Assembly (NCBI RefSeq): GCF_000143415.4
Contig: NW_003314264.1
Location: forward strand, 2,117,710 to 2,181,709
Direction: 5' to 3'
Length of the DNA stretch: 64,000 nt
Source: Selaginella moellendorffii
Lineage: Eukaryota; Plantae; Lycopodiophyta
Position numbers and translations under genes: made by a program. Positions 14,601 through 60,463 of this stretch are shown piece after piece (position 1 is the stretch's first letter; every line of letters begins with the position of its first letter). Below the pieces are notes generated by a model. That model was given only the letters and a program-made list of their open reading frames with translations. It ran no database searches and was not told the origin of the DNA.

Positions 14601-14900
14601 TCCGTCTTCGTCCATCTCGGACTCCATTTCGGAGTCCAACTTGGGTCCATTTCGGACTCCATCTTAGACACTTCCACGTGTCATGTGTTGGTCCTTTTCT
14701 GTCCCTTTTTGGAGCCTCGCTTATTGCTCGCTTCATGCTTGTTCCTTGAGCACTTTGTTGGGAGTTCCACTCCCGCTCTCGACCTTTCAAGTCGGAGCTT
14801 TTAGTCCAAACGTGTTACGCTTGTTTGACTTTCGCTTCGGCCACTACCACGTGGCACCCTTCCGGCTCCACTTTGGGGCCTAGGGATTTTGTGTCTCACA
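8639..14900 (-). mobile_element. Inner LARD-type LTR element inserted in the LTR of the outer element; 3' LTR truncated by a deletion
   Basis: TSD ACTCC at 8634-8638 and 14901-14905. 5' LTR 13175-14900; PBS reverse complement 13160-13171; 3' LTR remnant 8639-~9433. Internal region is homologous to 55619-59400 and has no long ORF. Confidence 0.85.
14175..14670. repeat. 6/11/12-bp CG-rich tandem array inside LTR (GGACTC, GGTCTC, GGACTCCATCTC units)
   Basis: Directly visible. Homologous arrays at 8335-8638, 30135-30630, 43915-44185, 50300-50570, 54090-54615 and 59965-60570. Confidence 0.9.
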
Positions 14901-15700
14901 ACTCCATTTTGGGTCCATCTCGAGTTCATCTCGGACTCCATATGTTGGTCCTCTTGTGTCATTTTTCTAGAGACTCACTTACTGTTTGCTTTATACTCAT
15001 TTTTGAGCACTTCGTTAGGAGTTGCACTCCCACTCTCAACTGTCCAAGTCGGAGCTTTTAGTCCAAATGTGTTACTCCTATTTGGCTTCCACTTCAGCCA
15101 CTACCACGTGGCACCCTTTCGATTCCACTTTCGGGGCTTTAGGATTTGTGTCTCATAACTCCACCACCCATAGACGAAGTTCGATGTCCTCATCGAATGA
15201 TAAACCATTTTATAAAGTAACATTAACATGTATTACCCTTTCCATCTTTTTCACTTAGAAGCTCTATTTCGTTAAAGTGGGAATTGTCATTATCCCACTT
15301 GTAAAATAAGGTTTCCAAACCTTTATATAGTATATAAATATAACAAAATTCAACTGCATTGAGGCACATGCCATTTTATTTTAAACAAGGAAATGTCTAC
15401 TCAATCACTTCTCCTCCCCCTGCCACTACTTCACCTCTCTCTTCTCCTTGTCATCGTCGTCCAATTTCTTTCCATCCTTTTAATATTGGCTCTGTTGCTC
15501 CGAGTCTAGGTGGAGCCCAAGTCCCCATTCAATCTTTACTTTCCCATTATTAATAAAACAACTTCGTAGACTTCCAATAACATGCTGTAACACTTCTAGT
15601 ATAATGCAAATCCTCTCAAAGAATTGTCTTTTAATATTAATACAATGGCATGGAACCCCATACCATAATAAGTTACATTTTTAAATAAATACATGCCATC

Positions 15701-18700
15701 TCAGACTGTTATTTTTTGCCTCCAACGCCTATACAATAATCTTGGAATTTCATCACTCTCCACACTATCAGGATTTAAACCCAATAGTAATGCCATCTCT
15801 TCTCTAATACGTCCACGCTCATGTTCAGTGGTCAAAGAACCCATCCGGTTGAGCAGATTATGGAGATGCGGATAGTGCTTGGCTAGACAATATACATGCC
15901 ATAAATGATGACTGGTGTCTGTCCGATCAAATGGCTTCTGATATACCGTTCCATCTGCCATTTGGTTGATTTCTGCAGCCACCTCCTGGACTGGCCGGTT
16001 CTCTATCACCATCGCTCCAAGCCGTTTTGCAAGGTCCCCCAGAACATACGGTTTCTTCTCCCTAGTTTCCATACTGCAAGAGATGGGGTGCACTGCATAT
16101 GTGTGCGTGTTCGCTGCAGTTTTAATCGGCGAGTCATCGATGATGAGGATTTCACTTGAGCTAGCAGTCCGGTTCATCACTATAGCCTCTGGCTTGACGA
16201 AGATGGGCTTGCTACCCCTCACATGGACCATAGTCAAGCAATCCTCTTGCGTTAGGAGAAACTCAAATGGTAATATTACTCGCGTCTGATCGTGCATCAT
16301 CTGTAGCAACGTTAATGCATTGTGGCGCATCATGGATGTCCAAACTCCCAATTGCAAATTGAACCCGGCCCTCTGTTTTAAGTGTCGCATGGTCATTATT
16401 AGATCCTGCAGTTTCTCCCGTGTGATTAATGTGAATCTGTCTCTTTTGACCAACTTGCGACCGCAGGCTTTGGAGGGTGCAATGACATTCGAGGACGAGC
16501 CACGCTCATGGGAGAAAAGGACACCGTTCAGATCAAAAACGATACAGTACCTTCGCCGTGACTCTGAAATGAAATGCGTCAGCATAAAAAATGGTACAAG
16601 TCAATTTTACCATCTACAATATTAGCGAATGTTGCTCCCGATGGTCGTTGAGAGGGTTTTGGTCGAGGAAACGTGAAGGGCGGAAATACTCTCCTCTGCA
16701 ATGTGGGGTCAATCGCATCCGATGGCGTGTGGGCACATGCCATTTCAGCTGTAGACTCTAGTACAACTGGTTCAACAGTGGCATGGGGTGGTTCCGATGG
16801 CGTGTGATCACATGCCATTTCAGCTGGTGCCTCCGTTGGCAAAGTGGACATGACCGAACAGGCAGCAGGGGCGGTGTAGGGAGGTTCCAACGGTGCGTAG
16901 TCAGACGATTGGGCACACGTTGAGTCCGTTGGAAATGAGGATACGACCGGCTCGGCGGCTGGGGCGGCCTCATGTGGGTCCAATGGCGCCTGGTCACCGT
17001 CAGTTGGATACGTGGACAAGATTGACTCAGTGGTATGGGCAGCATCAAGTGGAGCGTGGTCAGCTTGCTTGGCGTTGATATGGATAGTAGCCTCCACCAG
17101 CTCTGATGACTCTTGCAGCCAAGTAGAGTCCACTGGCGGATCCATATGCATGTCCAAATATCTCCCTTCGATTGAGATGGTATCCTCCCGTGCTACTAAA
17201 AACAAACTCATTAGCACATTGAATCGACTATACTGTATTTACCATCAACTGCTATTGAGGAACTAGGACCGATATCACTTGAGCGCACTGCTGATTCTGA
17301 AGGATTGGACATACGTTTCGACCCTTGCTTGGCACTATCCTTCCTCGACACTAAAGGCTAGAGTTTGTAAATTCAACTGAATAATCTCTACTTACCATTT
17401 GCTCTGCGACCTACATGGACAATGTTAGAAATGGTAAAAGGTTAGGAATGGATGTATTATTATTTACCTGATGGTTTGTCTTGTATGACCTTCCTCCACC
17501 GCTCTTTGGCCACCTCAGGCTGGCCATCGTCGTCATCATCGTCGTCGTCGTTATTGTGATCGTCACCATTGTGAGGACCATCCAAGTCCTCTTCGTCCTC
17601 CTCTTCTTCGTCCTCCTCTTCTTTGTCCTCCTCTTCGTCCTTCTGCTCTTCCTGCTCATTATCTTTCTCTGGCTCCTCATCCCCCTCCTGCATTTCTTCC
17701 ATAGGCTGCTCAGGCTGGATGGCTTGTTCTTCCAGGACCATCTTGGGAAAATCATCTGGCCGAGTCTCCATCTCAAAATACAAGACATCCATAGCCTGTT
17801 TTAGTGCGTGACCTAGGACTGTATCCTCACCCGACTGTCTTAACATGGTTTCTGCACGTTCTTGCACCCTTCGAAGACGATGAGATGAGAAAAACGTGGC
17901 CCTGCCTTGAAAAGCTTCCCTCATCCATTGTACCTCTCCATTGAGATTGGGGAAGGGGAGTCCGCCATAGGAATCTGAGTCATGAGGTGGTGACTGCCTG
18001 CTTTCACTCAGCCCTTGATCTGCAATGAATGGCATGAGCACACACGCCATAACCGCGAGGCATTACCTATCATCTTTTCGTTGCCCTTCTTCCTTTTCGA
18101 ATCAAACGCCTCTGATCTCGACGACTGTCCAACGTGCTTTCGCTTTTTATGACCACTGTCAGTTTGAGCTTGGCTGGTGCTTGCCTGTTTTGCCTTTGAA
18201 GAAGTTTCTCCTGCAAGGAATGGCATGAGACCACACGCCATTGCAAATATAATTTGTACCTCCTTTTTTCCTATTGCTTTTCTATTTGTCCTTCTTCGAT
18301 GCGCCACCAGTGCGCTTTTCAGTCCTCGTGTCTGAATATTCACAACGATCTATAATCAAAATAACGTGAGGCCTCACGTGACCTTACCTTGTGCAGGTTG
18401 TGAGCTCAGCCCAACATGGGTATCTTCAACAGTAGCTGTTAACGCCGTTTCAGCATCTGGGGGTGGCCACGCTCCTGCATACAGAGCTTGTGAGATAACA
18501 TTTAAACTTAAAGTGCGTACTCACCAGGTTCGCAGAGAAGATACTGTTTTTCTTTGGCAACTGTAATTATATGCTCCATTGAAGTCACCTCTTCAATGGA
18601 GTTTGTCACCGCAACACACGGGACACCCTTGAGTAGTGCGGCTCGAAAGAATAGTCCGCCGCAGTTGTACTCGACAACGCATTTGCCCTTGGAGTCGGAA

Positions 18701-21323
18701 GCAGGTGACCCACCCGCTATTGCGTTGAAAACCCAGCTGAGCATTTCCCATGCTGCACCTGGAGCTTTCTTTGGATTCGAAAGCTCCATAGCCGTCTTCA
18801 GTTCCTCAGGCACGGGTAAATTGACCTCTCTCAGATCAATTCGATTGGCCTTGTCGAACGAAGCTGGGAAGTCACTCCAGTCCCACTCTGCTGTAGGACC
18901 AATAACAAGGGCGAGTGTGAAGATGCGGACATTCATCGGTATCTTCTTCTTAGCCATTATCCCATGGATCTCCCGCATCTCCTTGCCTTTCAACTGAGCC
19001 TTCACCTCGTTCAAGGCCTTCCAGAACTTGTGATAGGATTCGGAGTCGTAGATCATATAGTGGACTGAAGATTCCACCTCCGCAAGTCCCACCATTAAGT
19101 CAATGATGGAGCTGACTTCGTCTGCATGAGTGATCTCCTCGTTTGTGAAGTCCATCACACAAAAGATGTTCTTGACCTGCTCATCTCCGCGGGAAACGAT
19201 GCTCCTCCACCTTTGATCCTCATCCGAATTCAAGTATACCCGGTAAGGTTCTCGATAGGCCTCTGCTGCGGGGTCGAGCTGTTTCTGAAGCCGGCGGTCG
19301 ACATCAATCTTAATGAAATTTGGATACTGATCCAACTTCTCAGCTTTACTTTTCGTGGCATCCCGCAGCAGATCGATGAACTTGGGGGCCCCCTTCACGT
19401 ACTCATCGATGTCTTCATTTGACAACTCCAGCGCTTCCATCATCTCTTGCGTGGTGTCGATGCTCACCCTCTCCACGGCCACTTGCTCAAAGATCCAATC
19501 CTTCAATAGCGCACGAGCTCTCAGAGTCGTGCACAAGTCCTCGTATGTCACAATATGGCCGGGAGTCATTTTGGTCTTGTTGAAGACAACCTCACCACGT
19601 AGAAGAGCATTAGCCACTGTCAGAAGGTCGTCGTCGTCTAGAGACCGCGAGAAACGCAAGGCGTTGAGCTTCAAATCATTGGGCTTCCGGCCGTCCTCCA
19701 CACCCATTGAGTTTGGCAACTCCCCGTCATGGTACCTCCTCAGCACATCTACCCATTTGTCAAAAACAACTTTTGTCGCGAGTAGAATGTTATGGATGCT
19801 GAGTGTGTCATTGACCCCCAGTGTTTTCGAGAGAAGACTCGAGAATTCCTGCAATGGAAATGGCGTGAGGCCACATGCTATGCCACATACAACGAGGCTT
19901 ACCTGCCAGGCGCTAGTTGCTAGTGCACGTCCTTGTCCTGGTTTTTGTGGCTTCTTCAGTTGAACCCAGAGCTTTCGTGTTCGTGCCAATGTCTCGTGCA
20001 GACCCGATTTGTAGCACGTTTCTTGCTTGACATTCTGCACGTGGGAGATGTATATGATAGATCGGAGGGGCGAGTTGCCTTTTATCAGGCGGACAACTCT
20101 TGTCTTGAAGACTTTCTTCACCTCCTCGCCCACCATAATATCCACAACTATCTCTTGCATCGCCAAGCTAGAATGCTGCCCGGAGACGGCATAGAATCGG
20201 ATGTTCTGATCGTCCAACACCTTCCTATTGATCAAGTCTGGAAACCTCATCTCGCCCTTCATTTTTTGGTAGTAGGGGATCACGTCTGCGATGTCGGGTG
20301 TTACTGGACTTGCTAGCATCTTCTGCTTCAATTTCTCCACCCACTCATCAGATACTAGCCTGTGGTTGTATTTGCTTTGGATGTCGATACGGCTCACGTC
20401 GATTGTATATACTTTGTTGGAATAGTAACAAGTACTATTATCTGCGACGATTTTTGCTGCCTCTTCTTGCTCTTTCTGCTCTTTGCGGCTCTTCTTTTTG
20501 GTGGGTGTAGTGTTCGAACCCGAGGCAATGGCATCACTGAGTAGCTTCTTTTTTGGAGCAGGAGAGTCGCACGTTGGCTTGAGCTTGACCACCCTTTTCT
20601 GCTTCGAGGTAGTTTCCAGATCGACCCCCTTCCCCTTTGCTTCGCGAACTGGAGTCACTCTCAACGGCTCAATGTTGGAATATAGTTTTTGAACATCGCC
20701 GTAGGTGAGGTCTGTGGATTCCATGTGATCTTCATAGACCCGCAGCGTCTTTGAAATTGTGGGCCCCCTGGACAACCTCTCCCTAGCTCCCTCTAGGAAT
20801 TCCTCATAGCCGCTGCCCCCCTCCGGGAAGCCGCTAGGATGTGCAAGGTGGATCTTGAAGGCAGACGCTGTCTCTACCACAAGTGCCAGTCCATATTCTT
20901 GCATGGAACTGCATGGAGTGTCTGTCACTTGGATGAGGATCCCCATGCATTCTTTTCTCCCACCATCTGTGTTGTACAGCCTCAGATCCTCGCCTTCCAT
21001 CCCGAAAGTCCAACTGGTGAGCTCCTCCCCCTTCTCTGCATCCACATTGACAGTGGCTGGAAGAAGAACGCAATTCCTCGCCTGTTCAGAAATGCACAAC
21101 AATTAGAGCTGACAGATGAAAAGCTAGTAGCTGGAAATAACGTGAGGCCACACGCCATTCACCACTGCATCAGATGTCTTGAGGCTGCATCCTAAGATGG
21201 CGTGAGGCTACACGCCATCTGTAACCGGACTGCACTCGAGAGCCCAATCGGTGCATGCCAATGTTGCTACTGAATGGCATGTGGCCTCATGCCATTTTCT
21301 ACTTGGCCTAAAAGACTTACCAT
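15701..21323 (-). CDS. Transposon cargo gene, 11 exons, ~1643 aa: ParB-like domain + degenerate beta-class DNA MTase-like region + acidic/repeat linker + FCP1/NIF HAD phosphatase-like domain (one in-frame TAG at 18282-18284 in this copy)
   Basis: Exons 21323-21321, 21081-19903, 19848-18525, 18474-18388, 18331-18260, 18210-18067, 18019-17468, 17410-17396, 17350-17243, 17195-16611, 16563-15701. All introns are GT-AG and all junctions keep frame. Motifs: FYAVSGQHSSLA; KCVVEYNCGG..RAALLKG; IVFDLNGVL, VWTS, IIDDSP. The ATG-only first exon is the least certain part. Confidence 0.7.
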
Positions 21324-21529
21324 TTGAAGCCGAATGGAGGCGTGACAACCGGACTCGCTGGCGAATGTGCACTGTGTGTGCAGCAGATCGTAGCAGCAAG
21401 GCTACTCTGCCACTTACAGTTGGAGAGTGGCGCTGAAATCTCCCGGGACGCCAAGTGGGCTGCGTGTGGGTGGCGGAGTGGGCGGCGGAGTTGGCGGCGA
21501 AGTTACAAACTGGGTGTGTCTTGAAGTGG

Positions 21530-21715
21530 ACGCCGATGCACACGAGCGCGATGCGAGCGCGATGCGAGCGCGAGTGTGATGCAAGCGCGAGTGGACGCCG
21601 ATGCACACGAGAAACCTGTAGAGAAGTGGGAGCGCGAGTGGGAGCGCGATGCGAGCGCGAGTGTGCGAGCGCGAGTACGAAGCAAAATGCCAACCCTAAC
21701 CTCACACGCGCGAAA
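21530..21715. repeat. CG-dense GCGAGCGCGA-type repeat upstream of the cargo gene
   Basis: Runs of GCGAGCGCGAT/GT; a related GCGAGCGGC array with 30-bp tandem units lies at 23965-24085 upstream of the transposase. Confidence 0.7.
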
Positions 21716-22099
21716 TGTCACGACGGTTGGTAATCCCGCCACGTCATCATTTCTCGGACTTGGGCGCCACCATTAATTTCTGGATCGGCGCGCGCATGCG
21801 TGAAATCCAAAAGAAATCCGCAACGTCATCATTCCTCGGACTGCATGCACGCGAAATCCAAAAGAAAGATCATGATTGGGATATCATTTAATACCCTCGC
21901 TATATTTATACCATGCATGATTGGATATTCCAAAGCATCTTGTATTTCCAAAAATGCCAGATGTTCAGCTAAATAAATTGTCAGAGGATGACGTTCAAGC
22001 ATGTGGGCTCATGCAATTTTGATCCCAAAAAATGCACCAAAAAATGCTCGGCATCATCTGGCGTTTCTCTTGAATGGCGTGGGGCCGCATGCCATTTTC

Positions 22100-23640
22100 A
22101 GGAGCACATAGGAGTATATTCCTAGAATATTCTGACACGCGCGAGATTGTTTTGAGTTTCCTGGAGATCCAACCGTTAGATCGCAACTAGATTTTACAGA
22201 ATGGTATACAATGTCCTTCTTGATGACCCTGCAAAGAAGCATCTCGATCGGACACCACATGAGACCACACGAGCCTTACAATGTTTCAGGGGCATTTGCC
22301 ATAGATCCGACCGTTATTTTTCTCCAAGATTCTACAGTTTGGTGTGCATTGACCTTTCCATCGACACTGCAAAGGGACATCACAATCAGATGCGGGATCA
22401 CAAGAAACCAACTTCACTAACTCTGGTTTCACCAAGATCTACGTAAGGAGTTATGAAATGAAAGGACCCTCTCTATTGAAATGTGTTTATGGTCCTAGGG
22501 GCATTGTGACATATCAAAGGATTTTGCATCAAGTTCTGTATTTGCATGTTTATCAAGCTACTGAATTGCTAAACCCTAAACCCTAAACCCTAAACCCTAA
22601 ACATGTGGCAAATGCTGCGTGAAGAAAGATGCCCTTTCTGGGCAAATGCTGTAAGAGGCAGATGCTGAGCAGATGTATCTCAGGCTAGCGAAGGGGACAA
22701 ACGAAAGCTAGCTATAAACATGACGGGATGCAAATAGATTACTAGGCTGGTCCTGCGAAAATCAAAAACCATAATTGAAAACATTGAAAATGCAAAAAGA
22801 AAGGTTTATAATATTTTTGAATTTTAAGCAACCAAAGGAATGTAAGTAGGGCATGTGTTTGTAAGTTTAAAAATGCCTCAGCCATATAAATTCCCAAGTA
22901 AATAAAGCTGTTTCTATTTTTGGTACAGGTAAACTTTATAGCGTGTGGGCTCATGCAATTTTGAACCCAAAAATGCACCAAAAGATGCTCGACTAGCATT
23001 ATTCTTTGAATGGCATGTGGCCTTATATTGCCATAAATGACACAGCATAATTATTCCTTTACACGGCGAATAATCTTGGAGCACATAGGAGTATATTCCT
23101 AGAATATTCTGACACGCGCGAGATTGTTTTGAGTTTCCTGGAGATCCAACCGTTAGATCGCAACCAGATTTTACAGAATGGTATACAATGTCCTTCTTGA
23201 TGACCCTGCAAAGAAGCATCTCGATCGGACACCACATGAGACCACACGAGCCTTACAATGTTTCAGGGGCATTTGCCATAGATCTGACCGTTATTTTTCT
23301 CCAAGATTCTACAGTTTGGTGTGCATTGACCTTTCCATCGACACTGCAAAGGGACATCACAATCAGATGCAGGATCACAAGAAGTAGTAGGGCATGTAAG
23401 TAGGGCATGTGTTTGTAAGTTTAAAAATGCCTCAGCCATATAAATTCCCAAGTAAATAAAGCTGTTTCTATTTTTGGTACAGGTAAACTTTATAGCGTGT
23501 GGGCTCATGCAATTTTGAACCCAAAAATGCACCAAAAGATGCTCGACTAGCATTATTCTTTGAATGGCATGTGGCCTTATATTGCCATAAATGGACGTAC
23601 ACACACAGCATAATTATTCCTTTACATGGCGAATAATCTT
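22100..23640. repeat. Internal direct duplications (~300 bp and ~220 bp modules) in the divergent intergenic region
   Basis: About 22100-22405 matches 23080-23380, and about 22845-23060 matches 23400-23640; duplicated spurious ORFs (MVYNVLLDDPAKK...) confirm this. Confidence 0.85.
22571..22601 (+). repeat. Plant telomeric repeat (CCCTAAA)x4 inside the transposon
   Basis: aaaccctaaaccctaaaccctaaaccctaaa; copy 2 has shorter tracts at about 41395 and 42258. Confidence 0.9.
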
Positions 23641-24441
23641 GGCGCGGATCACTGACATGGCATGGCAAAGTTCGAATCACTGACATGGCACAGCTGGATC
23701 GAGGCAAGGACATGATGTGACAAAGTTCAACCTCCGACAGTAAAGTCTAGAAGCTACTCAGTTTGAAATTTGTCAAAGGAATCATAAGATCTGGTTTGTC
23801 AGAGGATTTGATGTGACGTTCAAGCGTGTGTTATTTTTAAATTCTCGAACTCATTCCTAGGTCTATCATTTTTGTGCGCCGTGTTCTTGGTTCCGCTGAG
23901 CGCAGTGAGCGCTGCTTGTGTAAGCGGCGTTGTGAGCTGTGGTTTATGCGTCTACAAGCGGTTGCGGCATTGCGAGCGCCATTGCGAGCGGCAGTTTATG
24001 CGAGTGGCAGTTTGTGCGAGCGGCGCTACGAGCAGTTGCGGTGTTGCGAGCGGCGCTACGAGTAGTTGCGGTGTTGCGAGCGGCACTGTCTTTGGTGTGG
24101 CTACCGCTTCCTCTTGATATTCGGCACTTGTGCTTCCTGGTATGTTCACCATGGAATGGTTTAGGACCACATTTAGAAATGGCATGAGGCCACATGCCAT
24201 CTTGGGCCCTTGCAATTTCATGGCTAGCGTATTGTCATGTATGTTTTTACTTGCCTGCAGCTGTGTGTATATCAAGATGGCATGAGGCCTCATGCCAATT
24301 TTGTGAATGCGAAATTTCACGTGGGTGTCAATAGCATGTTTGAATAATGGCATGTGGCCTCATGCTATTTGGTATGTTATGATTTAGGCCATTCTCCAAT
24401 CATTTTTTGTATGGTCTTAACTTCTTTTCTGCACTTTCAGA

Positions 24442-27400
24442 ATGGCCTTCAGGGTTGGGGAAAAGGTTTACATTTTGAATGGTGGGAAGAGAGTTGCAAA
24501 AGGGACCCTTGTGTCTATGGATCGGAACTTTGTTATACACTGTCAAAGGCTTGGGGAAGGCAATGCTGCTGTATCAGTAGAGACTGTCTTCGATGGGAAT
24601 GTGGTCGCTATTGAACGAGGAGAGATGGTCGTCGGGGTAAATGTTGTTGTTGCCTTGAAAAATCTGCAGAAGAAAGCAGATGTTGGGGACAGCGCAAGTG
24701 CGACGCATGTTCCCTTCATGGATCTTAAGAACCGTGCTACATGGATTCAGGCAAAGGTGTTTCTAAACAACCCCGAGGGGGAGGTGGTAGCTGAGGGCTT
24801 AGCCACAGTTGTCGATCCAAGAGATGCGGTTGCTAATCAAGAATTGGGCTGGGATGATATTGGAGTTGCAATTTTAGAGGTTGTTGACACAGAAGAAAAC
24901 AGTCTGAATATTGGAAGCATTGTGCGGTGGAAATTGAGGCATTTAGTGTTTGAGAATGTGAAGGATTCACAATCAAACACCACTACAACTGATGACAGAA
25001 CATCTCTTCATGGGAAAAGAAAGTACACCTTCATACAGCGCAGCCAAAGGGATCTGAGCAACGAACCGAAAAGGCAGAAAATGGCGATGGAGGTTCGAAT
25101 GGTCTCGACAGTTGCTTGTTGCAAGAGGAGGTGCTGTCAACATGCTGATTGGGATGCTATTGAAGAGGAGAGAGCAAGATACAAGACATTGTCCTGGAAG
25201 GCAGCTCGCAATTTTGTGTATGAGGCATTACGGTCATCTGTTGATGCTTCAGAACATCAGGTGGGGGGCATGGTCTTCCAGAGGGGTTTGGTCTGCATGA
25301 AGGCATGGAGAATCATTTATGGAGTCCCTCGAACCACATTCTACAGAATCAAAACTGAGTTCGAGGAACAAAGGGTTCAACAGGCAGTCCATGGGAACGA
25401 CGGTACGCACAAAACCAGGGGTCATGTTGTATATGGAGAGGCAATCTTCAAGAGGTTTGTCGAGACATGTAGCGAGCAGCAACCACATAAAACCCGCCTC
25501 TTGGAAGATGGAACACGAGACACCCAACGAGTTCTCCCTTCCATGTATACCAAGGGGGCCATATTGGAAGATGTGAATCGGGAACTCCAGAGTAATGGCT
25601 ACAGGAAGCTGAGCCAATCTAGATTTAGTAGATTGTGGAGCAACAGGTTCAGGGATGTGAGTATAGGAAAGTACTCCAGCTTTTCAAAGTGTGACGAGTG
25701 CACTGCTATCAAAATGGCTTTGTCGAAGAATTCTTGCAGCGCTCAAGAGCGAGAGACGTTGGTTAGAAGGCGGCTCGACCACAACATCGAGCAGAGAAGC
25801 TGCAGGACTGCATATTATCATAACAGGATTCTCTCCATGGAGAGACCTGACTCTTACCTCTGCATCATCCACGACAAAATGGACCAGAAAAAGACGTGCT
25901 TACCTCGACTCAATCCTGCCCCCAAGGCAATCTCTTCATCCATGCAGCTGCCTGTGTCTCTGTTTGGCATAATCGCTCATGGGCATGGTGCCCAGAACTA
26001 TGGGAACTTCTTTGTACCTCTATGGGGTGGCGGGGGTGCAAACATGATGATTGCGTCCCTAGCAAAACACTTAAGGTCTCTGCAAAGTGCGCAGACTGAG
26101 CTGAATGGCCAACCCTTGCATAAGGCCCTTGTCGATCGAACCCCATACAGGGTTCAGCTGGAGGAGGAGCAAAGGCTTGCAGTATCGCGTGGGGCCCCAT
26201 GCCATCCCAGTGAATATGTTGGCCGTCAGATTGTAGGGTTATCACGTGAGGCCTCATGCCATTCCGACGAGGCTGGTCGCCCGGTGAATGCACAGCCTCA
26301 TCCAAACGAAGCAGAATCTCAAGGAAGTTCTTGCGGCCGATGTGGCCTTCCACCCCATCTTCTGCTCCAAACAGACAATGCTGGCAGTGAGAACAAAAAC
26401 ATGTACGTCTTCGCGTACTTGGCGATGCTTGTTGCCAAAGGCATATTTGAAACGGTTACACTTGGCTTTCTCATGGTTGGGCACACTCATGAAGACGTCG
26501 ATGCCATGTTCAGTCACCTGGCAGAGTCCCTCCGGCGATCCAATGTCCTCACCCTCCCACAACTCTACGATGAATTCCAAAATTGCATCAAAGGCACTGT
26601 TGAAGCTGCACTTGTGACAGAGGTTCCAGACTTTAAGGGGTTTGTAAGAGGCTACATCAGGGACGGATCCGAAATGCTGATTGGCCACTCCAAGCCTCTT
26701 CAGTTTCATTTCAGCATGCGTGACAGTGCTCCAGTGATGAGGTACAAGATGAGAGAATGGGACATAGTGTGGTTGCCAGTGGACGGCATTGAACTCTTCA
26801 AGAGAGATCCCATAACTGGGGAACCTATGATTCCTCAGGGTTCCCCACGGCCGATGCACCCGGATGGACTCAAAGACCAGGAAAGTATAGTGGCCGGGAT
26901 TAGACAGCATATTGCCTTCTGGAAGAGGGGGTTGGTGTTTGGTGGAGAATCCTATTTTAAGAGGTGCAAGCCTTTGCTCGAATACTGGGAGAAGATTATA
27001 TCTGCTATCCAAAATGGGCCGGTTGTATATGAAGAATTGGAAGAGTCCTTTTGGCCAGAACCCAGAGCACCAGATAGTAGCGGAACAATGTCCTCTGGAA
27101 ATGCAGTGACAGATAACGATGTTGAGGATCACTATTGTGGGCCGAGGAACAAGAAGCCGGATTCAACATTCAATCCAGTACAAGTCTGCAAAGGAATGGT
27201 CGTGCTTGTCAGACCCAGTAATAAAAAACAAATGATATGGGTGGGGCGCTGCATCATTGATGCAGAGGAGGACGCGGAAACTAACTCCTTCAATGTAACT
27301 GTGGAGTGGTTCAAGCCAAGTTCCGGATATACGAAGGATTGCCTAGAAAAGAGATGGGTGCTGAATCCAAGGGATCCCAGCATGAGCATATCGGTGGATA

Positions 27401-27580
27401 ATGTTGTGCATGGTTGGATGCGGAAGCAGAGTGCCACCATCACCTTGCCAGACCATGCAAGAGATGCAGCAAGAGCATTCATAACCCGGGTTCAAGGTGA
27501 GATTTAATATTCCTTTACTAAGTTTCTAATGTATTTTATTTCAAGGTGAACAATCCGAATCTGAATCAGAGGAGGCGTGA
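24442..27580 (+). CDS. Sola-like DDD transposase (~1029 aa; exons 24442-27496 and 27546-27580)
   Basis: KCDEC Cys motif, IIHDKMDQKKTCLP, LLLQTDNAGSENKN, FLMVGHTHEDVDAMFS. Splice acceptor ttttctgcactttcag just before the ATG; a terminal 49-nt GT-AG intron gives ...GEQSESESEEA*. Confidence 0.75.
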
Positions 27581-30500
27581 TGGCATGTGGCCCTTTGCAC
27601 TAGTATATCTTAATACTGGTCTGAGAAATAGAATGGCATATGCCCTCAGGCCTTTTACTAAATCACCTTTGAAAGAAATGCAAGCCTCTATGTCGTAAAA
27701 AAAAGGTACTAGAGAAATTCCTTAATAATATGAATGTTATTTAGTTTCATGAAAATACACTAAGGGTCAAATGAGTTAAATGACTTCTCCAGACTAGCAA
27801 TGCCTCTTGCTACACCTTCACAATTAGATTCGTTAGAAAAAGATAACATTGAATAATATCTAAATGTTCTCACCATTAAGTTATATGTCTGGCTAATAGG
27901 AATGACGTTCATCTTGGAAAGCTCACCACACGCTCAATGAACAAACAAATAGTGTGTGCGCGCATGCCATCGCTCTTCTTTAGCTTCAGATTCGGCTTGT
28001 TCACCTTGACAATGAGATTTATTATACAACCAGATGGACTCAGTCTGGACACAAAGTCACCACGCTAGTCACCATGCCCCAGATATGTCTAGCCCCTGGA
28101 CAAAAAACATATAATTTCACGTCATTTTCAAATACTTGAAAATTTGTACCTAGTCCCATTTTACTGAATAAATCCCACTTTAACGAAATAAAGCATATTT
28201 AGTCAAGCAGACTTGACGCGGTGATGAGAAACTCATGATGTTGGCTTGCACTTGCTAGTGTTGGGAACCCCCGCGATATTAAGCTTGGTCCCTTAATATC
28301 GCTAGATGATAGCTTACTGTGTCTGCCAAACACCCTTGCTATCATGCCCTTTGTGTTGGTCTCATTTTTGTCCCAAATGCTATTTATGGAAAGTGTCCAG
28401 ATTTGCTCATTTGGCATATCTACGGAATATAGAGATTGGCCGAAACACAATGGTGTTTGTCCCATGTCCAAATTCACAATCTAAGGACATTCCATAATTA
28501 GTAAGTTTCGAACTTGTCCCAGAGACTAACTCTTAATACTAAGGGAGGCTTGGTGTGAAAGCCCAAAGCGTGTGTTCCTCAAGGGGGGGGGGGGGGGGGC
28601 TGTGTGGGGTTCCAAATGTATAGTAGGGATAGTGGGTAGGTCAGGCATGGCCAACCAGCCTGAGGCATAGTCTAGCTCCCGCTTGCGTGCCTGTCCTTGT
28701 TCTGCGTCCGGCTTGGGTCTAAGCCCAAGTTCCATTCCATGCTAGCTGCTGGAGTACCCATATCCTCACGTTAGGCCACCGGTATGCCGAAATAGTGCCA
28801 GACTCCGTTTGGCTCCGTTTTGCATGCTAGTCCTAGCAATGGGATGCTGGTTGCTCCAGGACTGTTCCAAGTCACTTCGGGCTCCTGTCCCTTCACTCCT
28901 TGGGCTATATGCTCGGGAGTTGCTTCGTGGTTTGGTTCCATCACTCCTTGGCTTCACGCTTGGGAGTTTGGCACCGTTCCTTCGTTCAGTGGCCCAAGGC
29001 CCTGAACCTCGGGTTCCACACCACGTTCCTTTGGACACATGGCATGTGACACGTGGCATCTGTCACGTGGCACAAAGAGGGTTTAGGTTCCGCTTCATGG
29101 TGTTATCCTATGGTAAATCACCATAGGATAAAAGGTCAAAACCACATGCACAACACAATCCTTCCATTGTGTAGATCAGCTATTCCATGAGGTAATTAGT
29201 CATCCACCCGTACTGCAGTCCTACGGTGGATACCTTCGTCTATGGATACTCCACACAAAAAGAAGGACGTACGCATGGATGCCCATGGATACTCCACACA
29301 AGAGGAAGGGCATATGCATGGATGCCTAATATGTATGATTTCAAATTTAGGGGTAGAAATATACTTTGCTCAAGGGTATATTATATTTTTAAGTAGCTAC
29401 TAATCAATGGGAATCAAACCCGTGCCATTTGTTCCGATACCAACTGTAACACACTTTATCTCTCTCCCCTTAAGCTAACGGGAAAAGGGGCAATTACTTG
29501 ATGAGAGAGCCCTTAATGGCTATTTTATCCCCATTTATCCTCCAAGGTTCCAAAGATCCACGGTGACAGTATATCCAGATCTCATCCCATGATCACATGC
29601 GTTACACTTCCTCACCATGTGACCGTATCCTTGGTCGCCATACCAAAGGACTACTCTTTTTCCTTTCCACAATCTAAGACTTTGGGACAACATTTCAAAA
29701 CAGCGTGGCCCTACTCGAGCCTCATAGGTACTCTCCCCACCTTCTGCCTTTGGGTGTTTCAGCCATGGACTTAGAGCGAGGTTCCATTGAGCCATGCCAA
29801 GTATCCAAGTAGATAGTGCCACCCACGCTTAAACTAGGAGCATCAACCATTCAATTTCCCAGGGGAACTAGAGCCGACTCTTGAACATTTCACCAAGTTA
29901 CCCCACTTATCAATCTGTATTTACTTTAGCCTTGGACTTCTCAGTGGTTATCTCATCACCCAACATCAGGTATAGCCTTCTTGGGCCAAACTAGCCTTTC
30001 TTGGCCAAACTGACTCCACTGGGGTCCAATCCCCACACTCTCCCTACTATACTTTTGGAACCCTCTACAGCCCCCTGCCCCCCCTAGGGGACGATCACTT
30101 TAGGCTTTCACCCAATAGCCTATATTAGTATTTGGACTTAGACTCGGGCTCGAACTCGGATTCGGACTCGGTCTTGGACTCACACTCGGCCTCGGTCTTG
30201 GACTCAAACTCGACCTTGGTCTCGAACTCAGTCTTGGTCTCGATCTCAATTTCTTAGTCTCAATCTCGGTTCTATCTTGGACTCCATTTTGGGTCCATCT
30301 TGGGTCCATCTCGAATTCCATCTTGGACTCCATCTTAGACTCTATCTTGGGTCCATCTTGGGTCCATCTTGGATTCCATCTCATACTCCATCTTGGGTCC
30401 ATCTCGGACTCCATCTTAGACTTGATCTCGGACTCCATCTCAGGTCCATCTCGGGTCTATCTCGGACTCTATCTCAGGTCCATCTTGGGTCCATTTCAGA

Positions 30501-30852: not shown

Positions 30853-32100
30853 CTATTCTTTGTCGGTCCCCTAAAGAGATCAAGATTTTACATGCAAATG
30901 TCAAAAAAATATTGGAAAAATCAAAAGTTGCGGATGGGTATGTGAACCTTATCTTGTGACAAAGCCTGATAGGAGTATTTATTTTTGCATTGACTATCGT
31001 CCATTAAACAAAGTGATGATCCCAGATGTGTACCCTTTTCCTTACACTACTAGTCTCTTGGATTATCTAGGGAAAAGTTGTTGGTTCACCAAGCTAGTTT
31101 TGCTTTTAGGTATTGGCAAGTACTAATGGCCAAACAAGATATTCCTAAGACTGCTTTTTGTACACTATTTGGTTTATATGAGTTCTTGGTGATGCCATTT
31201 GGTCTCAACAATGCTCTAACGACTTTCTAACGGATGATGGATGAGGTTCTTTGCAATATGTTAAAGTTGACTACTGACTTCATTGATGATGTCTTGATTC
31301 ACTTGGAGGGGACATAGGAGGAACATACCCATAATGTTTGTAAAGTGTTAGATTCACTATGGTACATTAATTTAAAGTTAAGACGGTCGAAGTGCATGTT
31401 TGGATCCAAAGATATAACTTATCTTGGGTACCATATTTCTTGTGAGAGGTTTGTAAATTGATCCTAACAAACTTATGGCTATTTTAAGGTTTTCTACTCC
31501 AAAGTGTGTGAATAATGATATGTAGAGCTTCTTGGGCAAGGTTTAGTATCTCGATTGTTTTATGGATCATCTTTCTGATCACAATGCACTATTGCAAGTA
31601 TTGTTGAGGTCATCAATATTGTTTTTCATTTGGTCTGCAGACTGTGAACGGGAATTTGTGGATTTCAAAGAGCTATTAATGATTCCTTCAGTTTTGGCAT
31701 ATCCTAATTACACTCGACCTTTCATTTTGCACGTGGATGCTTTTGATATTGGTCTTAGAGGTGTGTTGATGCAAAAGAGCTCGAGTATGCTTAGTCAGTG
31801 CTATCCTATTGCATATATCAACTATACATTATAATCGGCAGAAATGAACCACTCTATGACAGAGAATGAGTGTTTAGCAGTAGTTTGGGGTTTCGAGAAA
31901 CTTCATGCATATTTACATAGCTCTCAAATGTTACTAAAAGGAAATCATACTGCCGTTACTTCATTATTGAAGAACTTAGTTGGTCGTACTGCTCAGTGGG
32001 CTTTAAAGTTTTAGATATATGATTTTGATGTTGTTCATCACTTGGGAAGTTCTATGCCTGATGTTAATGCCCTTTTTTAAGCTTCTTTTCCTCTTTCGTT
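30853..32100 (+). pseudogene. Degenerate Ty3/gypsy pol, RT and RNase H remnant (continuation of 7366-7993)
   Basis: [49 protein letters not shown] motifs, with many stops and frameshifts. Confidence 0.85.
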
Positions 32101-34756: not shown

Positions 34757-37700
34757 TCAGACTGTTATTTTTTGCCTCCAACGCCTATACAATAATCTTG
34801 GAATTTCATCACTCTCCACACTATCAGGATTTAAACCCAATAGTAATGCCATCTCTTCTCTAATACGTCCACGCTCATGTTCAGTGGTCGAAGAACCCAT
34901 CCGGTTGAGCAGATTATGGAGATGCAGATAGTGCTTGGCTAGACAATATACATGCCATAAATGATGACTGGTGTCTATCCAATCAAATGGCTTCTAATAT
35001 ACCGTTCCATCTGCCATTTGGTTGATTTCTGCAGCCACCTCCTAGACTGGCCGGTTCTCTATCACCATCGCTCCAAGCCGTTTTGCAAGGTCCCCCAGAA
35101 CATATGATTTCTTCTCCCTAGTTTCCATACTGCAAGAGATGGGGTGCACTGCATATGTGTGCGTGTTTGCTGCAGTTTTAATCGGCGAGTCATCGATGAT
35201 GAGGATTTCACTTGAGCTAGCAGTCCGGTTCATCACTACAGCCTCTGGCTTGACGAAGATGGGCTTGCTAACCCTCACATGGACCATAGTCAAGCAATCC
35301 TCCTGCGTTAGGAGAAAGTCAAATGGTAATATTACTCGCGTCTGATCGTGCATCATCTGTAGCAACGTTAATGCATTGTGGCGCATCATGGATGTCCAAA
35401 CTCCCAATTGCAAATTGAACCCGGCCCTCTGTTTTAATTGTCGCATGGTCATTATTAGATCCCACAGTTTCTCCCGTGTGATTAATGTGAATCTGTCTCT
35501 TTTGACCAACTTGCGACCGCAGGCTTTGGAGGGTGCAGTGACATTCGAGGACGAGCCACGCTCATGGGAGAAAAGGACACCGTTCAGATCAAAAATGATA
35601 CAGTACCTTTGCCGTGACTCTGAAATGAAATGCGTCAGCATAAAAAATGGTACAAGTCAATTTTACCATCTACAATATTAGCGAATGGTGCTCCCGATGG
35701 TCGTTGAGAGGGTTTTAGTCGAGGAAACGTGAAGGGCGGAAATACTCTCCTCTGCAATGTGGGGTCAATCGCATCCGATGGCGTGTGGGCACATGCCATT
35801 TCAGCTGTAGACTCTGGTACAACTGGCTCAACAGTGGCATGGGGTGGTTCCGATGGCATGTGATCACACGCCATTTCAGCTGGTGCCTCCGTTGGCAAAG
35901 TGGACATGACCAAACAGGCAGCAGGGGCGGTGTAGGGAGGTTCCAACGGCGCGTAGTCAGACGATTGGGCACACGTTGAGTCCGTTGGAAATGAGGATAC
36001 GACCGGCTCGGCAGCTGGGGCGGCCTCATGCGGGTCCAATGGCGCCTGGTCACCGTCAGTTGGATACGTGGACAAGATTGACTCAGTGGTATGGGCAGCA
36101 TCAAGTGGAGCGTGGTCAGCTTGCTTGGCGTTGATATGGATAGTAGCCTCTACCAGCTCTGATGACTCTTGCAGGCAAGTAGAGTCCACTAGCGGATCCA
36201 TATGCATGTCCAAATATCTCCCTTCGATTGAGATGGTATCCTCCCTACTGGCTACTAAAAACAAACTCATTAGCACATTGAATCGACTATACTGTATTTA
36301 CCATCAACTGCTATTGAGGAACTAGGACCAATATCACTTGGGCGCACTGCTGATTCTGAAGGATTGGACATCCGTTTCGACCCTTGCTTGGCACTATCCT
36401 TCCTCGACACTAAAGGCTAGAGTTTGTATCTTAATTCAACTGAATAATCTCTACTTACCATTTGCTCTGCGACCTACATGGACAATGTTAGAAATGGTAA
36501 AAGGTTAAGAATGGATGTACTATTATTTACCTGATGGTTTGTCTTGTATGACCTTCCTCCGCTGCTCTTTGGCCACCTCAGGCTGGCCATCGTCGTCATC
36601 ATCGTCGTCGTCGTTATTATGATCGTCACCATTGTGAGGACCATCCAAGTCCTCTTCGTCCTCCTCTTCTTCGTCCTCCTCTTCGTCCTTCTGCTCTTCC
36701 TGCTCATTATCTTTCTCTGGCTCCTCATCCCCCTCCTACATTTCTTCCATAGGCTGCTCAGGCTGGATGGCTTGTTCTTCCAGGACCATCTTGGGAAAAT
36801 CATCTGGCCGAGTCTCCATCTCAAAATACAAGACATCCATAGCCTGTTTTAGTGCGTGACCTAGGACCATATCCTCACCCGACTGTCTTAACATGGTTTC
36901 TGCACGTTCTTGCACCCTTCGAAGACGACGAGATGAGAAAAACGTGGCCCTGACTTGAAAAACATCCCTCATCCATTGTACCTCTCCATTGAGATTGGGG
37001 AAGGGGAGTCCGCCATAGGAATCTGAGTCAGGAGGTGGTGACTGGCTGCTTTCACTCAGCCCTTGATCTGCAATGAATGGCATGAGCACACACGCCATAA
37101 CCGCGAGGTATTACCTATCATCTTTTCGTTGCCCTTCTTCCTTTTCGAATCAAACGCCTCTGATCTCGACGACTGTCCAACGTGCTTTCGCTTTTTATGA
37201 CCACTGTCAGTTTGAGCTTGGCTGGTGCTTGCCTGTTTTGCCTTTGAAGAAGTTTCTCCTGCAAGGAATGGCATGAGACCACACGCCATTGCAAATATAA
37301 TTTGTACCTCCTTTTTTCCTATTGCTTTTCTGTTTGTCCTTCTTCGATGCGCCACCAGTGCGCTTTTCAGTCCTCGTGTCTGAATATTCACAACGATCTA
37401 TAATCAAAATGGTGTGAGGCCTCACGTGACCTTACCTTGTGCAGGTTGTGAGCTCGGCCCAACATGGGTATCTTCAACAGTAGCTGTTAACGCCGTTTCA
37501 GCATCTGGGGGTGGCCACACTCCTGCATACAGAGCTTGTGAGATAACATTTAAACTTAAAGTGCGTACTCACTAGGTTCGCAGAGAAGATACTGTTTTTC
37601 TTTGGCAACTGTAATTATATGCTCCATTGAAGTCACCTTTTCAATGGAGTTTGTCACCGCAACACACGGGACACCCTTGAGTAATGCGGCTCAAAAGAAT

Positions 37701-49808: not shown

Positions 49809-49903
49809 AAATATCAATTTGCAAAGTTGAGCAAGTGGCATATGTTGGGACCCGAAGGCGCGCCAAAGGTAAGCTAATTAGCATGGGTTGGATAGGTCGA
49901 CCA

Positions 49904-54457: not shown

Positions 54458-54500
<43 letters not shown>

Positions 54501-60417: not shown

Positions 60418-60463
<46 letters not shown>

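What the first reader, a model, noticed from the sequence alone, without database searches (positions are those of the whole stretch)
15701..21323. DNA transposon carries a ~1640-aa cargo protein: ParB-like + degenerate DNA-methyltransferase-like + FCP1/HAD phosphatase-like
Seen: five apparently unrelated minus-strand ORFs join through ten GT-AG introns (nine are 45-57 nt) into one reading frame. The internal phase-1 exons are all multiples of 3, including a 15-nt micro-exon. The single TAG at 18282 is CAG in copy 2. Motif reading: (a) IDVSRIDI..YNHRLVSDEWVEKLKQKM...FYAVSGQHSSLA...ISHVQN resembles the ParB/Srx/DGQHR fold, but the Arg of GxHR is Ser. (b) NIFCVMDFT ... PKKAP...MLSWVF...KCVVEYNCGG..RAALLKG..CVAV follows the motif order of beta-class N4C/N6A methyltransferases, with DPPY lost. 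(c) DLNGVL/VWTS/K/IIDDSP are HAD motifs I-IV of FCP1/SCP-type phosphatases. Known: ParB-MTase fusions occur in phages, and Mutator-like VANDAL elements encode sequence-specific anti-silencing VANC proteins. Inference: this is a transposon-encoded chromatin or anti-silencing factor of partly prokaryotic ancestry. I know of no description of this architecture in a Sola-like element.
Basis: partly seen in the sequence, partly recalled or inferred. Interest (0 to 1): 0.92.

Follow-up and report, generated by a model that had tools for sequence, protein, structure and literature searches.

The report
Transposon accessory gene: ParB, dead methylase, phosphatase
A 12.9-kb cut-and-paste transposon carries, opposite its transposase, a spliced gene for a roughly 1,600-residue protein that combines a bacterial-type ParB DNA-binding fold, a decayed DNA-methylase remnant and an FCP1-type phosphatase; the ParB-plus-methylase pairing is already published for Sola1 transposons, both copies here are dead, and the phosphatase fusion and the element-specific palindromes are the new parts.

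Summary
Removing nine GT-AG introns of 45-57 nt joins the minus-strand ORFs into one 4,950-nt frame. Its only internal stop is the TAG at 18282-18284, which is CAG in copy 2.

Domain calls:
- ParB/Srx fold: confirmed. AlphaFold pLDDT is 81, and ParB, Noc, KorB and sulfiredoxin top three structure libraries.
- FCP1/NIF phosphatase: confirmed (Pfam, above the curated cut-off). Motif I reads DLNGV, so the general-acid Asp is Asn.
- Methylase-like part: supported only by profile comparison (hhalign P 9e-5 on the motif-I segment). Its fold model failed, and DPPY is absent across the plant family.

A ParB plus N4C/N6A-methylase accessory gene on the strand opposite the transposase is published for Ectocarpus Sola1-1 (PMC12477816).

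New here: a land-plant clade with a dead methylase, the phosphatase fusion, and unrelated element-specific palindromes in all four ParB-gene loci examined. In three of them, palindromes occupy the same intron.

Both copies are pseudogenes (1 and 7 stops), diverge neutrally with many CpG changes, and are almost untranscribed. RNA data confirm none of the nine internal introns.

First-stage notes record the same element on four other pieces of this genome.

The parts
15259..28194 (.). Transposon copy 1 (12,936 bp). Terminal inverted repeats of about 25 bp (GCTCTATTTCGTTAAAGTGGGA) lie at 15259-15285 and 28168-28194.
   Evidence: Homology with copy 2 starts and stops exactly here, with different flanks on each side. 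Copy 2 is flanked by a TTGA direct repeat if the ends are read as AAGCTC...GAGCTT. The flank of copy 1 is not clean.
15701..21102 (-). Accessory (cargo) gene, open frame of ten exons: 21102-19903, 19848-18525, 18474-18388, 18331-18260, 18210-18067, 18019-17468, 17410-17396, 17350-17243, 17195-16611, 16563-15701. The likely start is the ATG at 21000-20998.
   Evidence: The frame stays open apart from one TAG.
18282..18284 (-). Premature TAG in exon 4 of copy 1. Copy 2 has CAG at this position.
19903..20427 (-). ParB/sulfiredoxin-fold domain with a conserved SGQHS motif.
   Evidence: Alignment A1 of 17 homologues. AlphaFold pLDDT 81. Foldseek top hits are Noc, ParB, KorB, Srx and phage ParB.
19354..19848 (-). 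Helical middle domain of unknown fold family. In relatives it always follows the ParB-like domain.
   Evidence: pLDDT about 80. The same Chara braunii and Nematostella proteins match both domains. No convincing PDB match.
18526..19251 (-). Degenerate N6_N4-methylase-like domain. The motif IV position reads MDFTN. Motif I reads VVEYNCGG at about 18615-18693.
   Evidence: The fold model is below pLDDT 50.
16611..18474 (-). Seven short exons encoding an acidic, basic and Pro-rich linker of about 520 aa. It has no Pfam family above the curated cut-off and looks disordered by composition.
16103..16549 (-). NIF/FCP1-type HAD phosphatase domain. Motif I is DLNGV.
   Evidence: Pfam PF03031, E 2.4e-6, 27.8 bits against a cut-off of 21.8. 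68 of 100 nearest Atlas clusters are NIF.
21082..21153 (-). 72-nt intron in the 5' leader, the only splice seen in RNA-derived contigs. Its donor GT lies inside a palindrome.
   Evidence: run X20, one contig from a copy that differs from this one by a few letters.
21137..21295 (.). Three copies of the 22-bp palindrome ATGGCGTGAGGCCTCACGCCAT just upstream of the coding start. Others lie in introns at 19860, 18361, 18220 and 18029, in exon 9 at 16722 and 16797, in the intergenic stretch at 22074-24347, and in the transposase ORF at 26184 and 26241.
   Evidence: 19 matches at up to 3 mismatches against 0 expected. 38 matches at up to 5 mismatches, 37 of them inside the two copies.
24442..27507 (+). 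Transposase ORF of 1,021 aa, transcribed divergently from the cargo gene.
   Evidence: Pfam DUF7869, E 4.6e-42. A homologue lies head-to-head with the ParB-like gene in Riccia (tblastn E 2e-47).
34757..40150 (-). Cargo gene of copy 2. It has seven premature stops and a GT-to-AT change at the first intron donor.

Best explanation
This is the accessory gene of an autonomous Sola1-type TIR transposon, transcribed divergently from the transposase.

Shown:
- One spliced frame encodes, in order: an N-terminal region of unknown kind, a ParB/Srx-fold domain, a helical domain that always accompanies it, a methylase-like domain that lacks the catalytic (D/N/S)PP(Y/F) motif, a long linker that looks disordered by composition, and an FCP1/NIF-type HAD phosphatase domain.
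- Both copies in this window are pseudogenes. They diverge neutrally with many CpG changes, and almost no transcripts map to them.

Inferred:
- The ParB-like plus helical module binds the element's own 22-bp palindromes. These cluster in the divergent promoter region and in the gene's introns, so the protein is tethered to copies of its own family.
- The ancestral partner activity, N6A or N4C methylation of the element's DNA as proposed for algal Sola1 elements, has been lost in this plant clade. The methylase remnant survives as a scaffold or binding module.
- The fused phosphatase is the new effector. It would act on a phosphoprotein at the element, and the RNA polymerase II CTD is the obvious candidate for this enzyme family. 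The result would favour expression or transposition.
- Because motif I is DxNxV, the phosphatase may be slow, or may trap its substrate rather than turn it over.
For: Single gene: nine 45-57-nt GT-AG introns restore one frame. The spliced linker has 1 stop against 13 and 38 in the other frames. Exonic indels are multiples of 3.

ParB fold.

Methylase remnant:
- 63 of the 100 nearest Atlas clusters are PF01555.
- The Selaginella and Riccia homologues share the VxEY/DFF-xGG segment.
- The Riccia homologue hits PF01555 at E 0.004 in that segment.
- A family profile against a YhdJ-family profile gives hhalign P 9.4e-5 and probability 59% over 66 columns. The reversed control gives P 0.17.
- A second, collinear weak hit falls on motif IV.

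Phosphatase.

Transposon accessory status: the same head-to-head pairing with a homologous transposase occurs in Riccia. The same layout is published for Ectocarpus Sola1-1.

Palindrome link:
- All four loci examined that carry a ParB-like gene (this window and three liverwort loci) have their own dispersed palindrome: 19, 19, 14 and 14 matches against 0 expected.
- In the window, in Riccia P0024 and in Calypogeia P0005, palindromes sit in the intron at the same position, right after the ParB-domain exon.
- An analogous observation was made for red-algal ParB-domain accessory genes.

Decay.
Against: No transcript evidence joins the ParB/methylase block to the phosphatase block. The only contigs that cross two internal introns are unspliced.

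The methylase-like fold could not be modelled (pLDDT below 50). Pfam and PDB profile searches of this sequence find nothing.

The Arg of the ParB/Srx GxxR nucleotide-binding motif is Ser throughout the family, so ParB-like CTP clamping is doubtful.

No phosphatase was found in the Riccia, Calypogeia or Selaginella loci, so the fusion may be young. Its 18 differences between the two copies show no constraint (15 nonsynonymous against 12.3 expected).

Binding of the protein to the palindromes is an inference from co-occurrence only.
Confidence: 0.55

Rival explanations
1. Two or more genes rather than one. The ParB/methylase-like accessory gene ends at the TAA at 18510-18508. The phosphatase, with or without the linker, is a separately transcribed host-derived gene picked up by the element.
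For: The 864-aa ORF has its own stop immediately after the proposed donor. No splice junction for any internal intron was seen, and contigs of run X19 are unspliced over two of them. Relatives in liverworts and Selaginella lack the phosphatase. The phosphatase block shows no constraint between the copies.
Against: Seven consecutive short GT-AG introns of one size class, all in phase 1, keep 520 linker codons open and in frame with both flanking blocks. The alternative frames carry 13 and 38 stops. Run X19 is of uncertain type and may hold DNA. First-stage notes on four other pieces of this genome list the same three-part gene, but I did not check them.
Confidence: 0.2
2. The palindromes have nothing to do with the ParB-like protein. 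They are binding sites for the transposase, as with the sub-terminal repeats of CACTA elements, or small hairpin insertions that spread within the element and are tolerated in introns.
For: Some palindromes lie near the right end of copy 2 and inside the transposase region. Two lie in frame inside exon 9. The donor of the one RNA-supported intron lies inside a palindrome, which would suit an insertion that brings its own splice site.
Against: Most palindromes are central rather than sub-terminal, and none lies in the TIRs. Unrelated palindromes occupy the same intron position in three divergent elements. That fits a conserved function tied to this gene better than random hairpin spread.
Confidence: 0.2
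3. The block is a non-functional patchwork of captured gene fragments, in the manner of Pack-type transduplication, that never made a working protein.
For: Both copies carry stops, transcription is almost nil, and divergence between the copies is neutral.
Against: The ParB-like and helical domains have homologues at about 25% identity with conserved motifs in lycophytes and liverworts, and fold-level matches in a moss, Chara and animals. Linkage to a homologous transposase is conserved in Riccia. The position of the first intron appears conserved across homologues. Neutral decay is what is expected of any inserted, silenced copy.
Confidence: 0.05

Closest known systems
Accessory protein of Ectocarpus Sola1-1_Ec32 (PMC12477816)
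   Same: A large TIR transposon whose second gene lies on the strand opposite the transposase. The product has an N-terminal ParB-like DNA-binding domain followed by an N4C/N6A-type DNA methylase domain. The authors proposed that it binds and marks its own element.
   Different: Here the methylase domain has lost the catalytic motif and escapes Pfam. A linker of about 520 aa and an FCP1/NIF phosphatase are appended (about 1,615 aa against 1,104 aa). The host appears to be a land plant of bryophyte or lycophyte grade. I could not compare the sequences directly because the Ectocarpus protein was not retrievable with these tools.
Plavaka accessory gene PAG3 of red algae (bioRxiv 10.1101/2025.02.11.637652)
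   Same: A ParB-homologous N-terminal domain fused to an enzymatic effector in a giant DNA transposon, with arrays of inverted repeats next to the gene that were proposed as its binding sites.
   Different: The effector there is a 2OG-dependent oxygenase and the transposon superfamily is different (KDZ/Plavaka).
Phage and prophage ParB-methylase fusions (PF02195 plus PF01555) and ParB-fused Dam-type methylases of chlorophytes and chytrids (PMC4738411)
   Same: The same domain order, ParB N-domain then amino-methylase. This is the probable ultimate source of the module. Phage ParB proteins and phage methylases with ParB domains match the model.
   Different: Those enzymes keep intact catalytic motifs. 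They have no phosphatase and are not carried by eukaryotic transposons. The chlorophyte clade is Dam-like, not PF01555-like.
FCP1/SCP small CTD phosphatases (Pfam NIF, PF03031)
   Same: The Pfam match is above the curated cut-off. The nucleophile Asp, the motif II Thr/Ser and the motif IV DD can be read in the sequence.
   Different: Motif I is DLNGV, so the general-acid Asp is replaced by Asn. The domain sits at the C-terminus of a transposon protein. No PDB sequence match was found.
VANC anti-silencing proteins of VANDAL (Mutator-like) elements
   Same: A transposon-encoded accessory protein proposed to recognise short repeated motifs in its own element family.
   Different: No sequence or fold relationship was tested or seen. 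The comparison is an analogy only.

Membership tests
ParB/Srx superfamily | ParB/sulfiredoxin alpha-beta fold | tested here: met
   AlphaFold model with pLDDT 81. The top PDB hits are Noc, ParB, KorB, PadC and sulfiredoxin at probability about 1.0 and E from 5e-4. The AFDB and viral libraries give the same families.
ParB/Srx superfamily | GxxR nucleotide-binding motif (GERR in ParB, GCHR in Srx, DGQHR in DndB-like proteins) | tested here: not met
   The motif is SGQHS. G, Q, H and S are at least 90% conserved in 17 homologues, and the Arg position is Ser.
ParB/Srx superfamily | Sequence-profile match (Pfam ParB_N) or a PDB sequence match | tested here: not met
   No Pfam family at E up to 1. 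The profile of A1 against PDB sequences found nothing relevant.
ParB/Srx superfamily | Adjacent helix-turn-helix DNA-binding domain that recognises a palindromic site | tested here: inconclusive
   A conserved helical domain follows (pLDDT about 80) but has no convincing structural match. Palindromes co-occur with the gene in all four loci examined. Binding was not tested.
N6_N4 DNA methylases (PF01555, beta class) | Pfam profile match above the gathering score | tested here: not met
   No hit at E up to 1 for this sequence. The Riccia homologue P0024 scores 17.6 bits, E 0.004, below the cut-off of 26.7.
N6_N4 DNA methylases (PF01555, beta class) | Catalytic motif IV, (D/N/S)PP(Y/F/W) | tested here: not met
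   The position reads MDFTN here, and ADLRR, LDATT, CDSAN and ADFAR in relatives. The Asp is kept but PPY is lost family-wide.
N6_N4 DNA methylases (PF01555, beta class) | SAM-binding motif I (DPFxGSG), the preceding helix, and circular order IV then I | tested here: met
   The segment reads VVEYNCGG here and VLDFFSGG and VVDYFSGG in Riccia. hhalign of the four-member profile against the YhdJ family gives P 9.4e-5 and probability 59% over 66 columns. The reversed control gives P 0.17. The motif IV hit is collinear and upstream. The match is weak, and the HPxxKP element is missing here.
N6_N4 DNA methylases (PF01555, beta class) | Rossmann-type methylase fold | tested here: inconclusive
   The model is below pLDDT 50 over residues 195-441 of exon 2. 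Only the last beta-alpha-beta unit matches Rossmann nucleotide-binding units, at Z 4-5. Atlas shape hits are class I methylases at TM about 0.25.
FCP1/SCP phosphatases (Pfam NIF, PF03031) | Pfam profile match above the gathering score | tested here: met
   27.8 bits against a cut-off of 21.8, E 2.4e-6, profile positions 1-126 of 160. 68 of 100 nearest Atlas clusters carry NIF, with a top score of 0.95 and 207 shared features.
FCP1/SCP phosphatases (Pfam NIF, PF03031) | Motif I DxDx(T/V), with both the nucleophile Asp and the general-acid Asp | tested here: not met
   The sequence is FDLNGVL in both copies. The second Asp is Asn.
Sola1-type transposon with a ParB-methylase accessory gene | TIR element with the accessory gene on the strand opposite the transposase | tested here: met
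   TIRs and copy boundaries. Cargo on the minus strand and transposase on the plus strand. The same layout occurs in Riccia locus L001.
Sola1-type transposon with a ParB-methylase accessory gene | Transposase belongs to the Sola1 superfamily | not testable with these tools
The only hit is Pfam DUF7869 (E 4.6e-42), and no reference Sola1 transposase was available. A 4-bp TTGA duplication at copy 2 is compatible.

The most novel reading that the evidence does not exclude
Sola1-type transposons of land plants carry a self-recognition system. A ParB-like protein reads an element-specific palindrome that changes together with the element lineage. The palindromes are kept in the divergent promoter and in one conserved intron of the protein's own gene. 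In this lineage the original DNA-methylase effector has been replaced by an FCP1-type phosphatase, which acts on RNA polymerase II or on silencing factors at the element.
Probability: 0.25. Interest if true: 0.8.

Novelty: new variant of a known kind. Interest (0 to 1): 0.55.

Why it matters
Accessory genes of eukaryotic DNA transposons are mostly unexplained. A ParB-like reader fused to a DNA methylase has only been reported from algae, and its function has not been tested.

This finding extends that module to land-plant elements. It shows that the methylase can decay while the ParB-like and helical parts stay conserved, and it records a new effector fusion with a phosphatase.

It also gives a concrete prediction that is cheap to test. 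Each element family pairs its ParB-like protein with its own palindrome. Four protein-palindrome pairs are now available for swap experiments.

If the pairing holds, it would be a second example of sequence-specific self-recognition by plant transposons, after VANDAL/VANC. It would also supply a set of orthogonal DNA-binding modules.

Tried and rejected
- A full HMMER scan of the 864-aa ORF against 1.84 billion representatives gave only 24 weak hits (best E 7e-12). Three were repeat or RTX artefacts (P0007, P0008, P0013) and were dropped.
- Word-index searches gave nothing useful. I tried the methylase-like part, the ParB part and the exon-2 profile.
- Profile searches against PDB sequences gave nothing for the ParB-like, methylase-like and phosphatase parts.
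- The AlphaFold model of exon 2 failed for the methylase-like half. Foldseek (PDB), VIA-align and the Atlas shape search on it therefore returned only weak, generic Rossmann or methylase hits.
- A first hhalign run in global mode was meaningless. With the six-member alignment the result was P 0.009 only.
- RNA runs: two deep 2026 RNA-seq runs gave 5 and 0 reads, and older contigs were unspliced or from another copy. The 30-nt loose end of the spliced contig is not in the window, so that transcript is probably chimeric.
- dN/dS by Nei-Gojobori looked like 0.53. A simulation matched to the mutation spectrum shows that this is neutral: 82 nonsynonymous changes against 86.7 expected. Only the N-terminal 620 codons are slightly low (28 against 35, P 0.02). 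I therefore claim no selection from these two copies.
- The Atlas look-up of the middle domain fell below the recognition threshold and is uninformative.
- A first search for the Calypogeia palindrome used the wrong spacer and found nothing. The corrected pattern found 14 matches.
- The stop in copy 1 was read only as X in searches.

Full report
CONTEXT

The window holds two copies of one element, at 15259-28194 and 34316-63527. They are 96.7% identical over the first 6.7 kb. Copy 2 is interrupted by two nested LTR retrotransposons, at 43831-51358 and 53857-61567. Homology begins and ends at the same bases in both copies, with unrelated flanks. The ends are imperfect inverted repeats of about 25 bp (GCTCTATTTCGTTAAAGTGGGA). 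Copy 2 is flanked by TTGA on both sides if the ends are read as AAGCTC...GAGCTT.

A 1,021-aa ORF on the plus strand (24442-27507) matches Pfam DUF7869 at E 4.6e-42. I take it to be the transposase. I could not test the label 'Sola' against reference sequences.

THE GENE MODEL

On the minus strand, nine GT-AG introns of 54, 50, 56, 49, 47, 57, 45, 47 and 47 nt join ten exons into a 4,950-nt frame. The third intron could instead be 38 nt; both versions keep the frame. Exons 3-10 start in phase 1, and the 15-nt exon is present.

The single internal stop is TAG at 18284-18282, which is CAG in copy 2.

The model is not a chance construct:
- The spliced linker has 1 stop in the model frame against 13 and 38 in the other frames.
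- The unspliced DNA has 20-29 stops in every frame.
- Exonic indels between the copies are 3 and 15 nt, and the intronic indel is 4 nt.
- Several ORF-derived homologues from other organisms end in W-K/Q-V exactly where the first intron begins here. That is what a gene caller produces when it runs into a GT at a conserved intron.
- The annotated Riccia and Calypogeia genes have an intron at that position.

RNA

The RNA evidence is thin. Two deep RNA-seq runs gave 5 and 0 reads, all in the 5' leader. Their orientation is the one expected for a minus-strand RNA if the library is of the usual stranded kind.

One older run holds a contig with a 72-nt splice, 21153..21082, from a slightly different copy. 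Another run holds unspliced contigs across two internal introns and may contain DNA.

The spliced contig continues into sequence that is not in the window. With that splice there is no in-frame ATG upstream, so the start is probably the ATG at 21000-20998.

STATE OF THE COPIES

Copy 1 has one stop. Copy 2 has seven stops and a GT-to-AT donor change.

Of the 126 substitutions in the coding frame, 103 are transitions and 53 lie at CpG sites. A simulation that keeps the mutation spectrum expects 86.7 nonsynonymous changes against 82 observed.

The two copies therefore diverged neutrally, as silenced and probably methylated insertions do. This says nothing about the ancestor.

ParB-LIKE DOMAIN

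HMMER against 1.84 billion representatives found only distant relatives (best E 7e-12). Among them are proteins of Selaginella moellendorffii, Riccia sorocarpa and Calypogeia fissa, and unnamed metagenomic or run-assembled ORFs. Seventeen of them align over residues 200-400. The motif F-x-A-I-S-G-Q-H-S is nearly invariant, and the alignment has an invariant Arg.

AlphaFold on that alignment gave pLDDT 81. The structure libraries agree:
- Foldseek against the PDB returns Noc, ParB, KorB, PadC, sulfiredoxin and SbnI, and essentially nothing else of note.
- The viral library returns phage ParB proteins and phage methylases with ParB domains.
- AFDB clusters return a Physcomitrium protein and many Chara braunii proteins. 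Two of the Chara proteins are annotated as N-4/N-6 DNA methylases and one carries a Helitron helicase-like domain annotation. Mussel, sea-anemone, sponge and sea-urchin proteins also appear.

The fold call is therefore solid. The Arg of the GxxR nucleotide motif is Ser across the family.

MIDDLE DOMAIN

Residues 1-165 of exon 2 model as a helical domain at pLDDT about 80. The same Chara and Nematostella proteins that matched the ParB-like domain match this one, immediately downstream. The two domains therefore form a conserved module. No PDB or Atlas match identifies the fold.

METHYLASE-LIKE DOMAIN

No sequence search finds it directly, and its fold model failed. Several weak lines of evidence point to the same family and the same motifs:
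- 63 of the 100 nearest Atlas clusters carry PF01555, and recognition is above the threshold.
- The Selaginella protein P0001 and the Riccia protein P0024 align to residues 804-847 of the ORF.
- P0024 hits PF01555 at E 0.004 in that very segment.
- DNA just downstream of the Riccia P0016 gene model encodes VVDYFSGG...AFASN.
- A profile of these four segments against a profile of 81 YhdJ-family methylases gives hhalign P 9.4e-5 and probability 59% over 66 columns. The alignment runs from the KxPGxxW motif through motif I to the IGIE strand. The reversed control gives P 0.17.
- The wider family profile also gives a collinear weak hit on motif IV.

At the motif IV position the family keeps an Asp but has no PPY. 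I conclude that this is probably a PF01555-derived domain that is catalytically dead across the plant clade.

PHOSPHATASE

Pfam NIF matches above its curated cut-off. The nearest Atlas clusters are FCP1-homology proteins. Motif I reads DLNGV in both copies, so the general-acid Asp is Asn. That raises the possibility of a weak or substrate-trapping enzyme.

No phosphatase was found in the three liverwort loci or the one Selaginella locus.

COMPARATIVE CONTEXT

In Riccia locus L001, the ParB-like gene P0024 lies head-to-head with a homologue of the window's transposase, about 5 kb away (26% identity over 602 aa, E 2e-47). This is the same layout as here.

The Selaginella relative P0001 sits among ordinary host genes and lacks the ParB part. 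It may be a domesticated or stranded remnant.

PALINDROMES

The 22-bp palindrome noted by other first-stage readers occurs 19 times at up to 3 mismatches against 0 expected. At up to 5 mismatches, 37 of 38 matches lie within the two copies.

In copy 1, the 17 matches are distributed as follows:
- nine lie between the two genes;
- four lie in cargo introns;
- two lie in frame in exon 9;
- two lie in the transposase ORF.

The three liverwort loci each have their own, unrelated palindrome:
- L001: CTTCGGGACGCGTCCCGAAG, 19 matches.
- L003: AACCTCACGC-N4-GCGTGAGGTT, 14 matches.
- L004: GCCTCGAGA-N3-TCTCGAGGC, 14 matches, partly in 35-bp tandem arrays.
All three have 0 expected by chance.

In P0024 and P0005, three and four palindromes lie in the intron right after the ParB-domain exon. 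This is the same position as intron 19902-19849 here.

This co-occurrence is the main support for the inferred binding of the ParB-like module to the palindromes. It is still only an inference.

LITERATURE

The Ectocarpus TE survey describes a 1,104-aa ParB-like plus N4C/N6A-methylase accessory protein encoded opposite the transposase of a 21.5-kb Sola1 element. It cites similar proteins in green and red algae (PMC12477816).

The Bostrychia genome paper describes a ParB-domain accessory protein with adjacent inverted-repeat arrays.

ParB-fused methylases of chlorophytes and phage ParB-methylase loci are discussed in PMC4738411. Sola1 is listed for Physcomitrella.

I found no paper on a phosphatase fusion in such elements.

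VERDICT

The anatomy is real, and two of the three domain calls are firm. The core architecture is a known kind.

The variant features are the dead methylase, the phosphatase fusion and the lineage-specific palindromes in a conserved intron. They are worth a follow-up experiment, but the copies in this window are themselves dead.

Noticed in passing
window 43831-51358 and 53857-61567: Two LTR retrotransposons are nested in copy 2 of the transposon. The first has 1,148-bp LTRs that are 99.2% identical, so it is young. The second has LTRs that are 95% identical and is related (86%, inverted) to the element at 9453-14900 that abuts copy 1.
   Followed up: no
window 16722-16743 and 16797-16818: Two degenerate copies of the 22-bp palindrome lie in frame inside coding exon 9. 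They encode the repeated peptide EMAC(D/A)HTPS. The palindrome is therefore not confined to introns.
   Followed up: partly
window 21082-21153: The donor GT of the only RNA-supported intron lies inside a palindrome (AATGGC|GTGTGG). The palindrome consensus contains GTGAGG, a usable 5' splice site. That may explain why four of the nine internal introns carry one.
   Followed up: partly
L002 10001-11425 (Selaginella moellendorffii GL377575.1): P0001 (451 aa) is homologous to the helical and methylase-like domains only. It starts with the last helix of the ParB-like domain and lies between ArfGap and VQ host genes, with a near-identical counterpart (P0027) on a second scaffold. It may be a domesticated derivative.
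   Followed up: partly
L004 10499-10624 and 13591-13681 (Calypogeia fissa): The element-specific palindrome forms tandem arrays with a 35-bp period, both inside the gene's intron and downstream of the gene.
   Followed up: partly
L003 12630-12830 (Riccia sorocarpa): The annotated gene P0016 stops too early. A methylase motif-I segment (VVDYFSGG...) is encoded about 100 nt downstream of the annotated end.
   Followed up: partly
window 14171-14664: A degenerate short-period repeat translates as GLGL or SDSD runs in the LTR element left of copy 1. It is also present, inverted, at 54088-54625 and 59964-60578.
   Followed up: no
window 32001-34000: A very AT-rich stretch (27% G+C) lies between the two transposon copies. 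One isolated palindrome match is at 32784, outside either copy.
   Followed up: no
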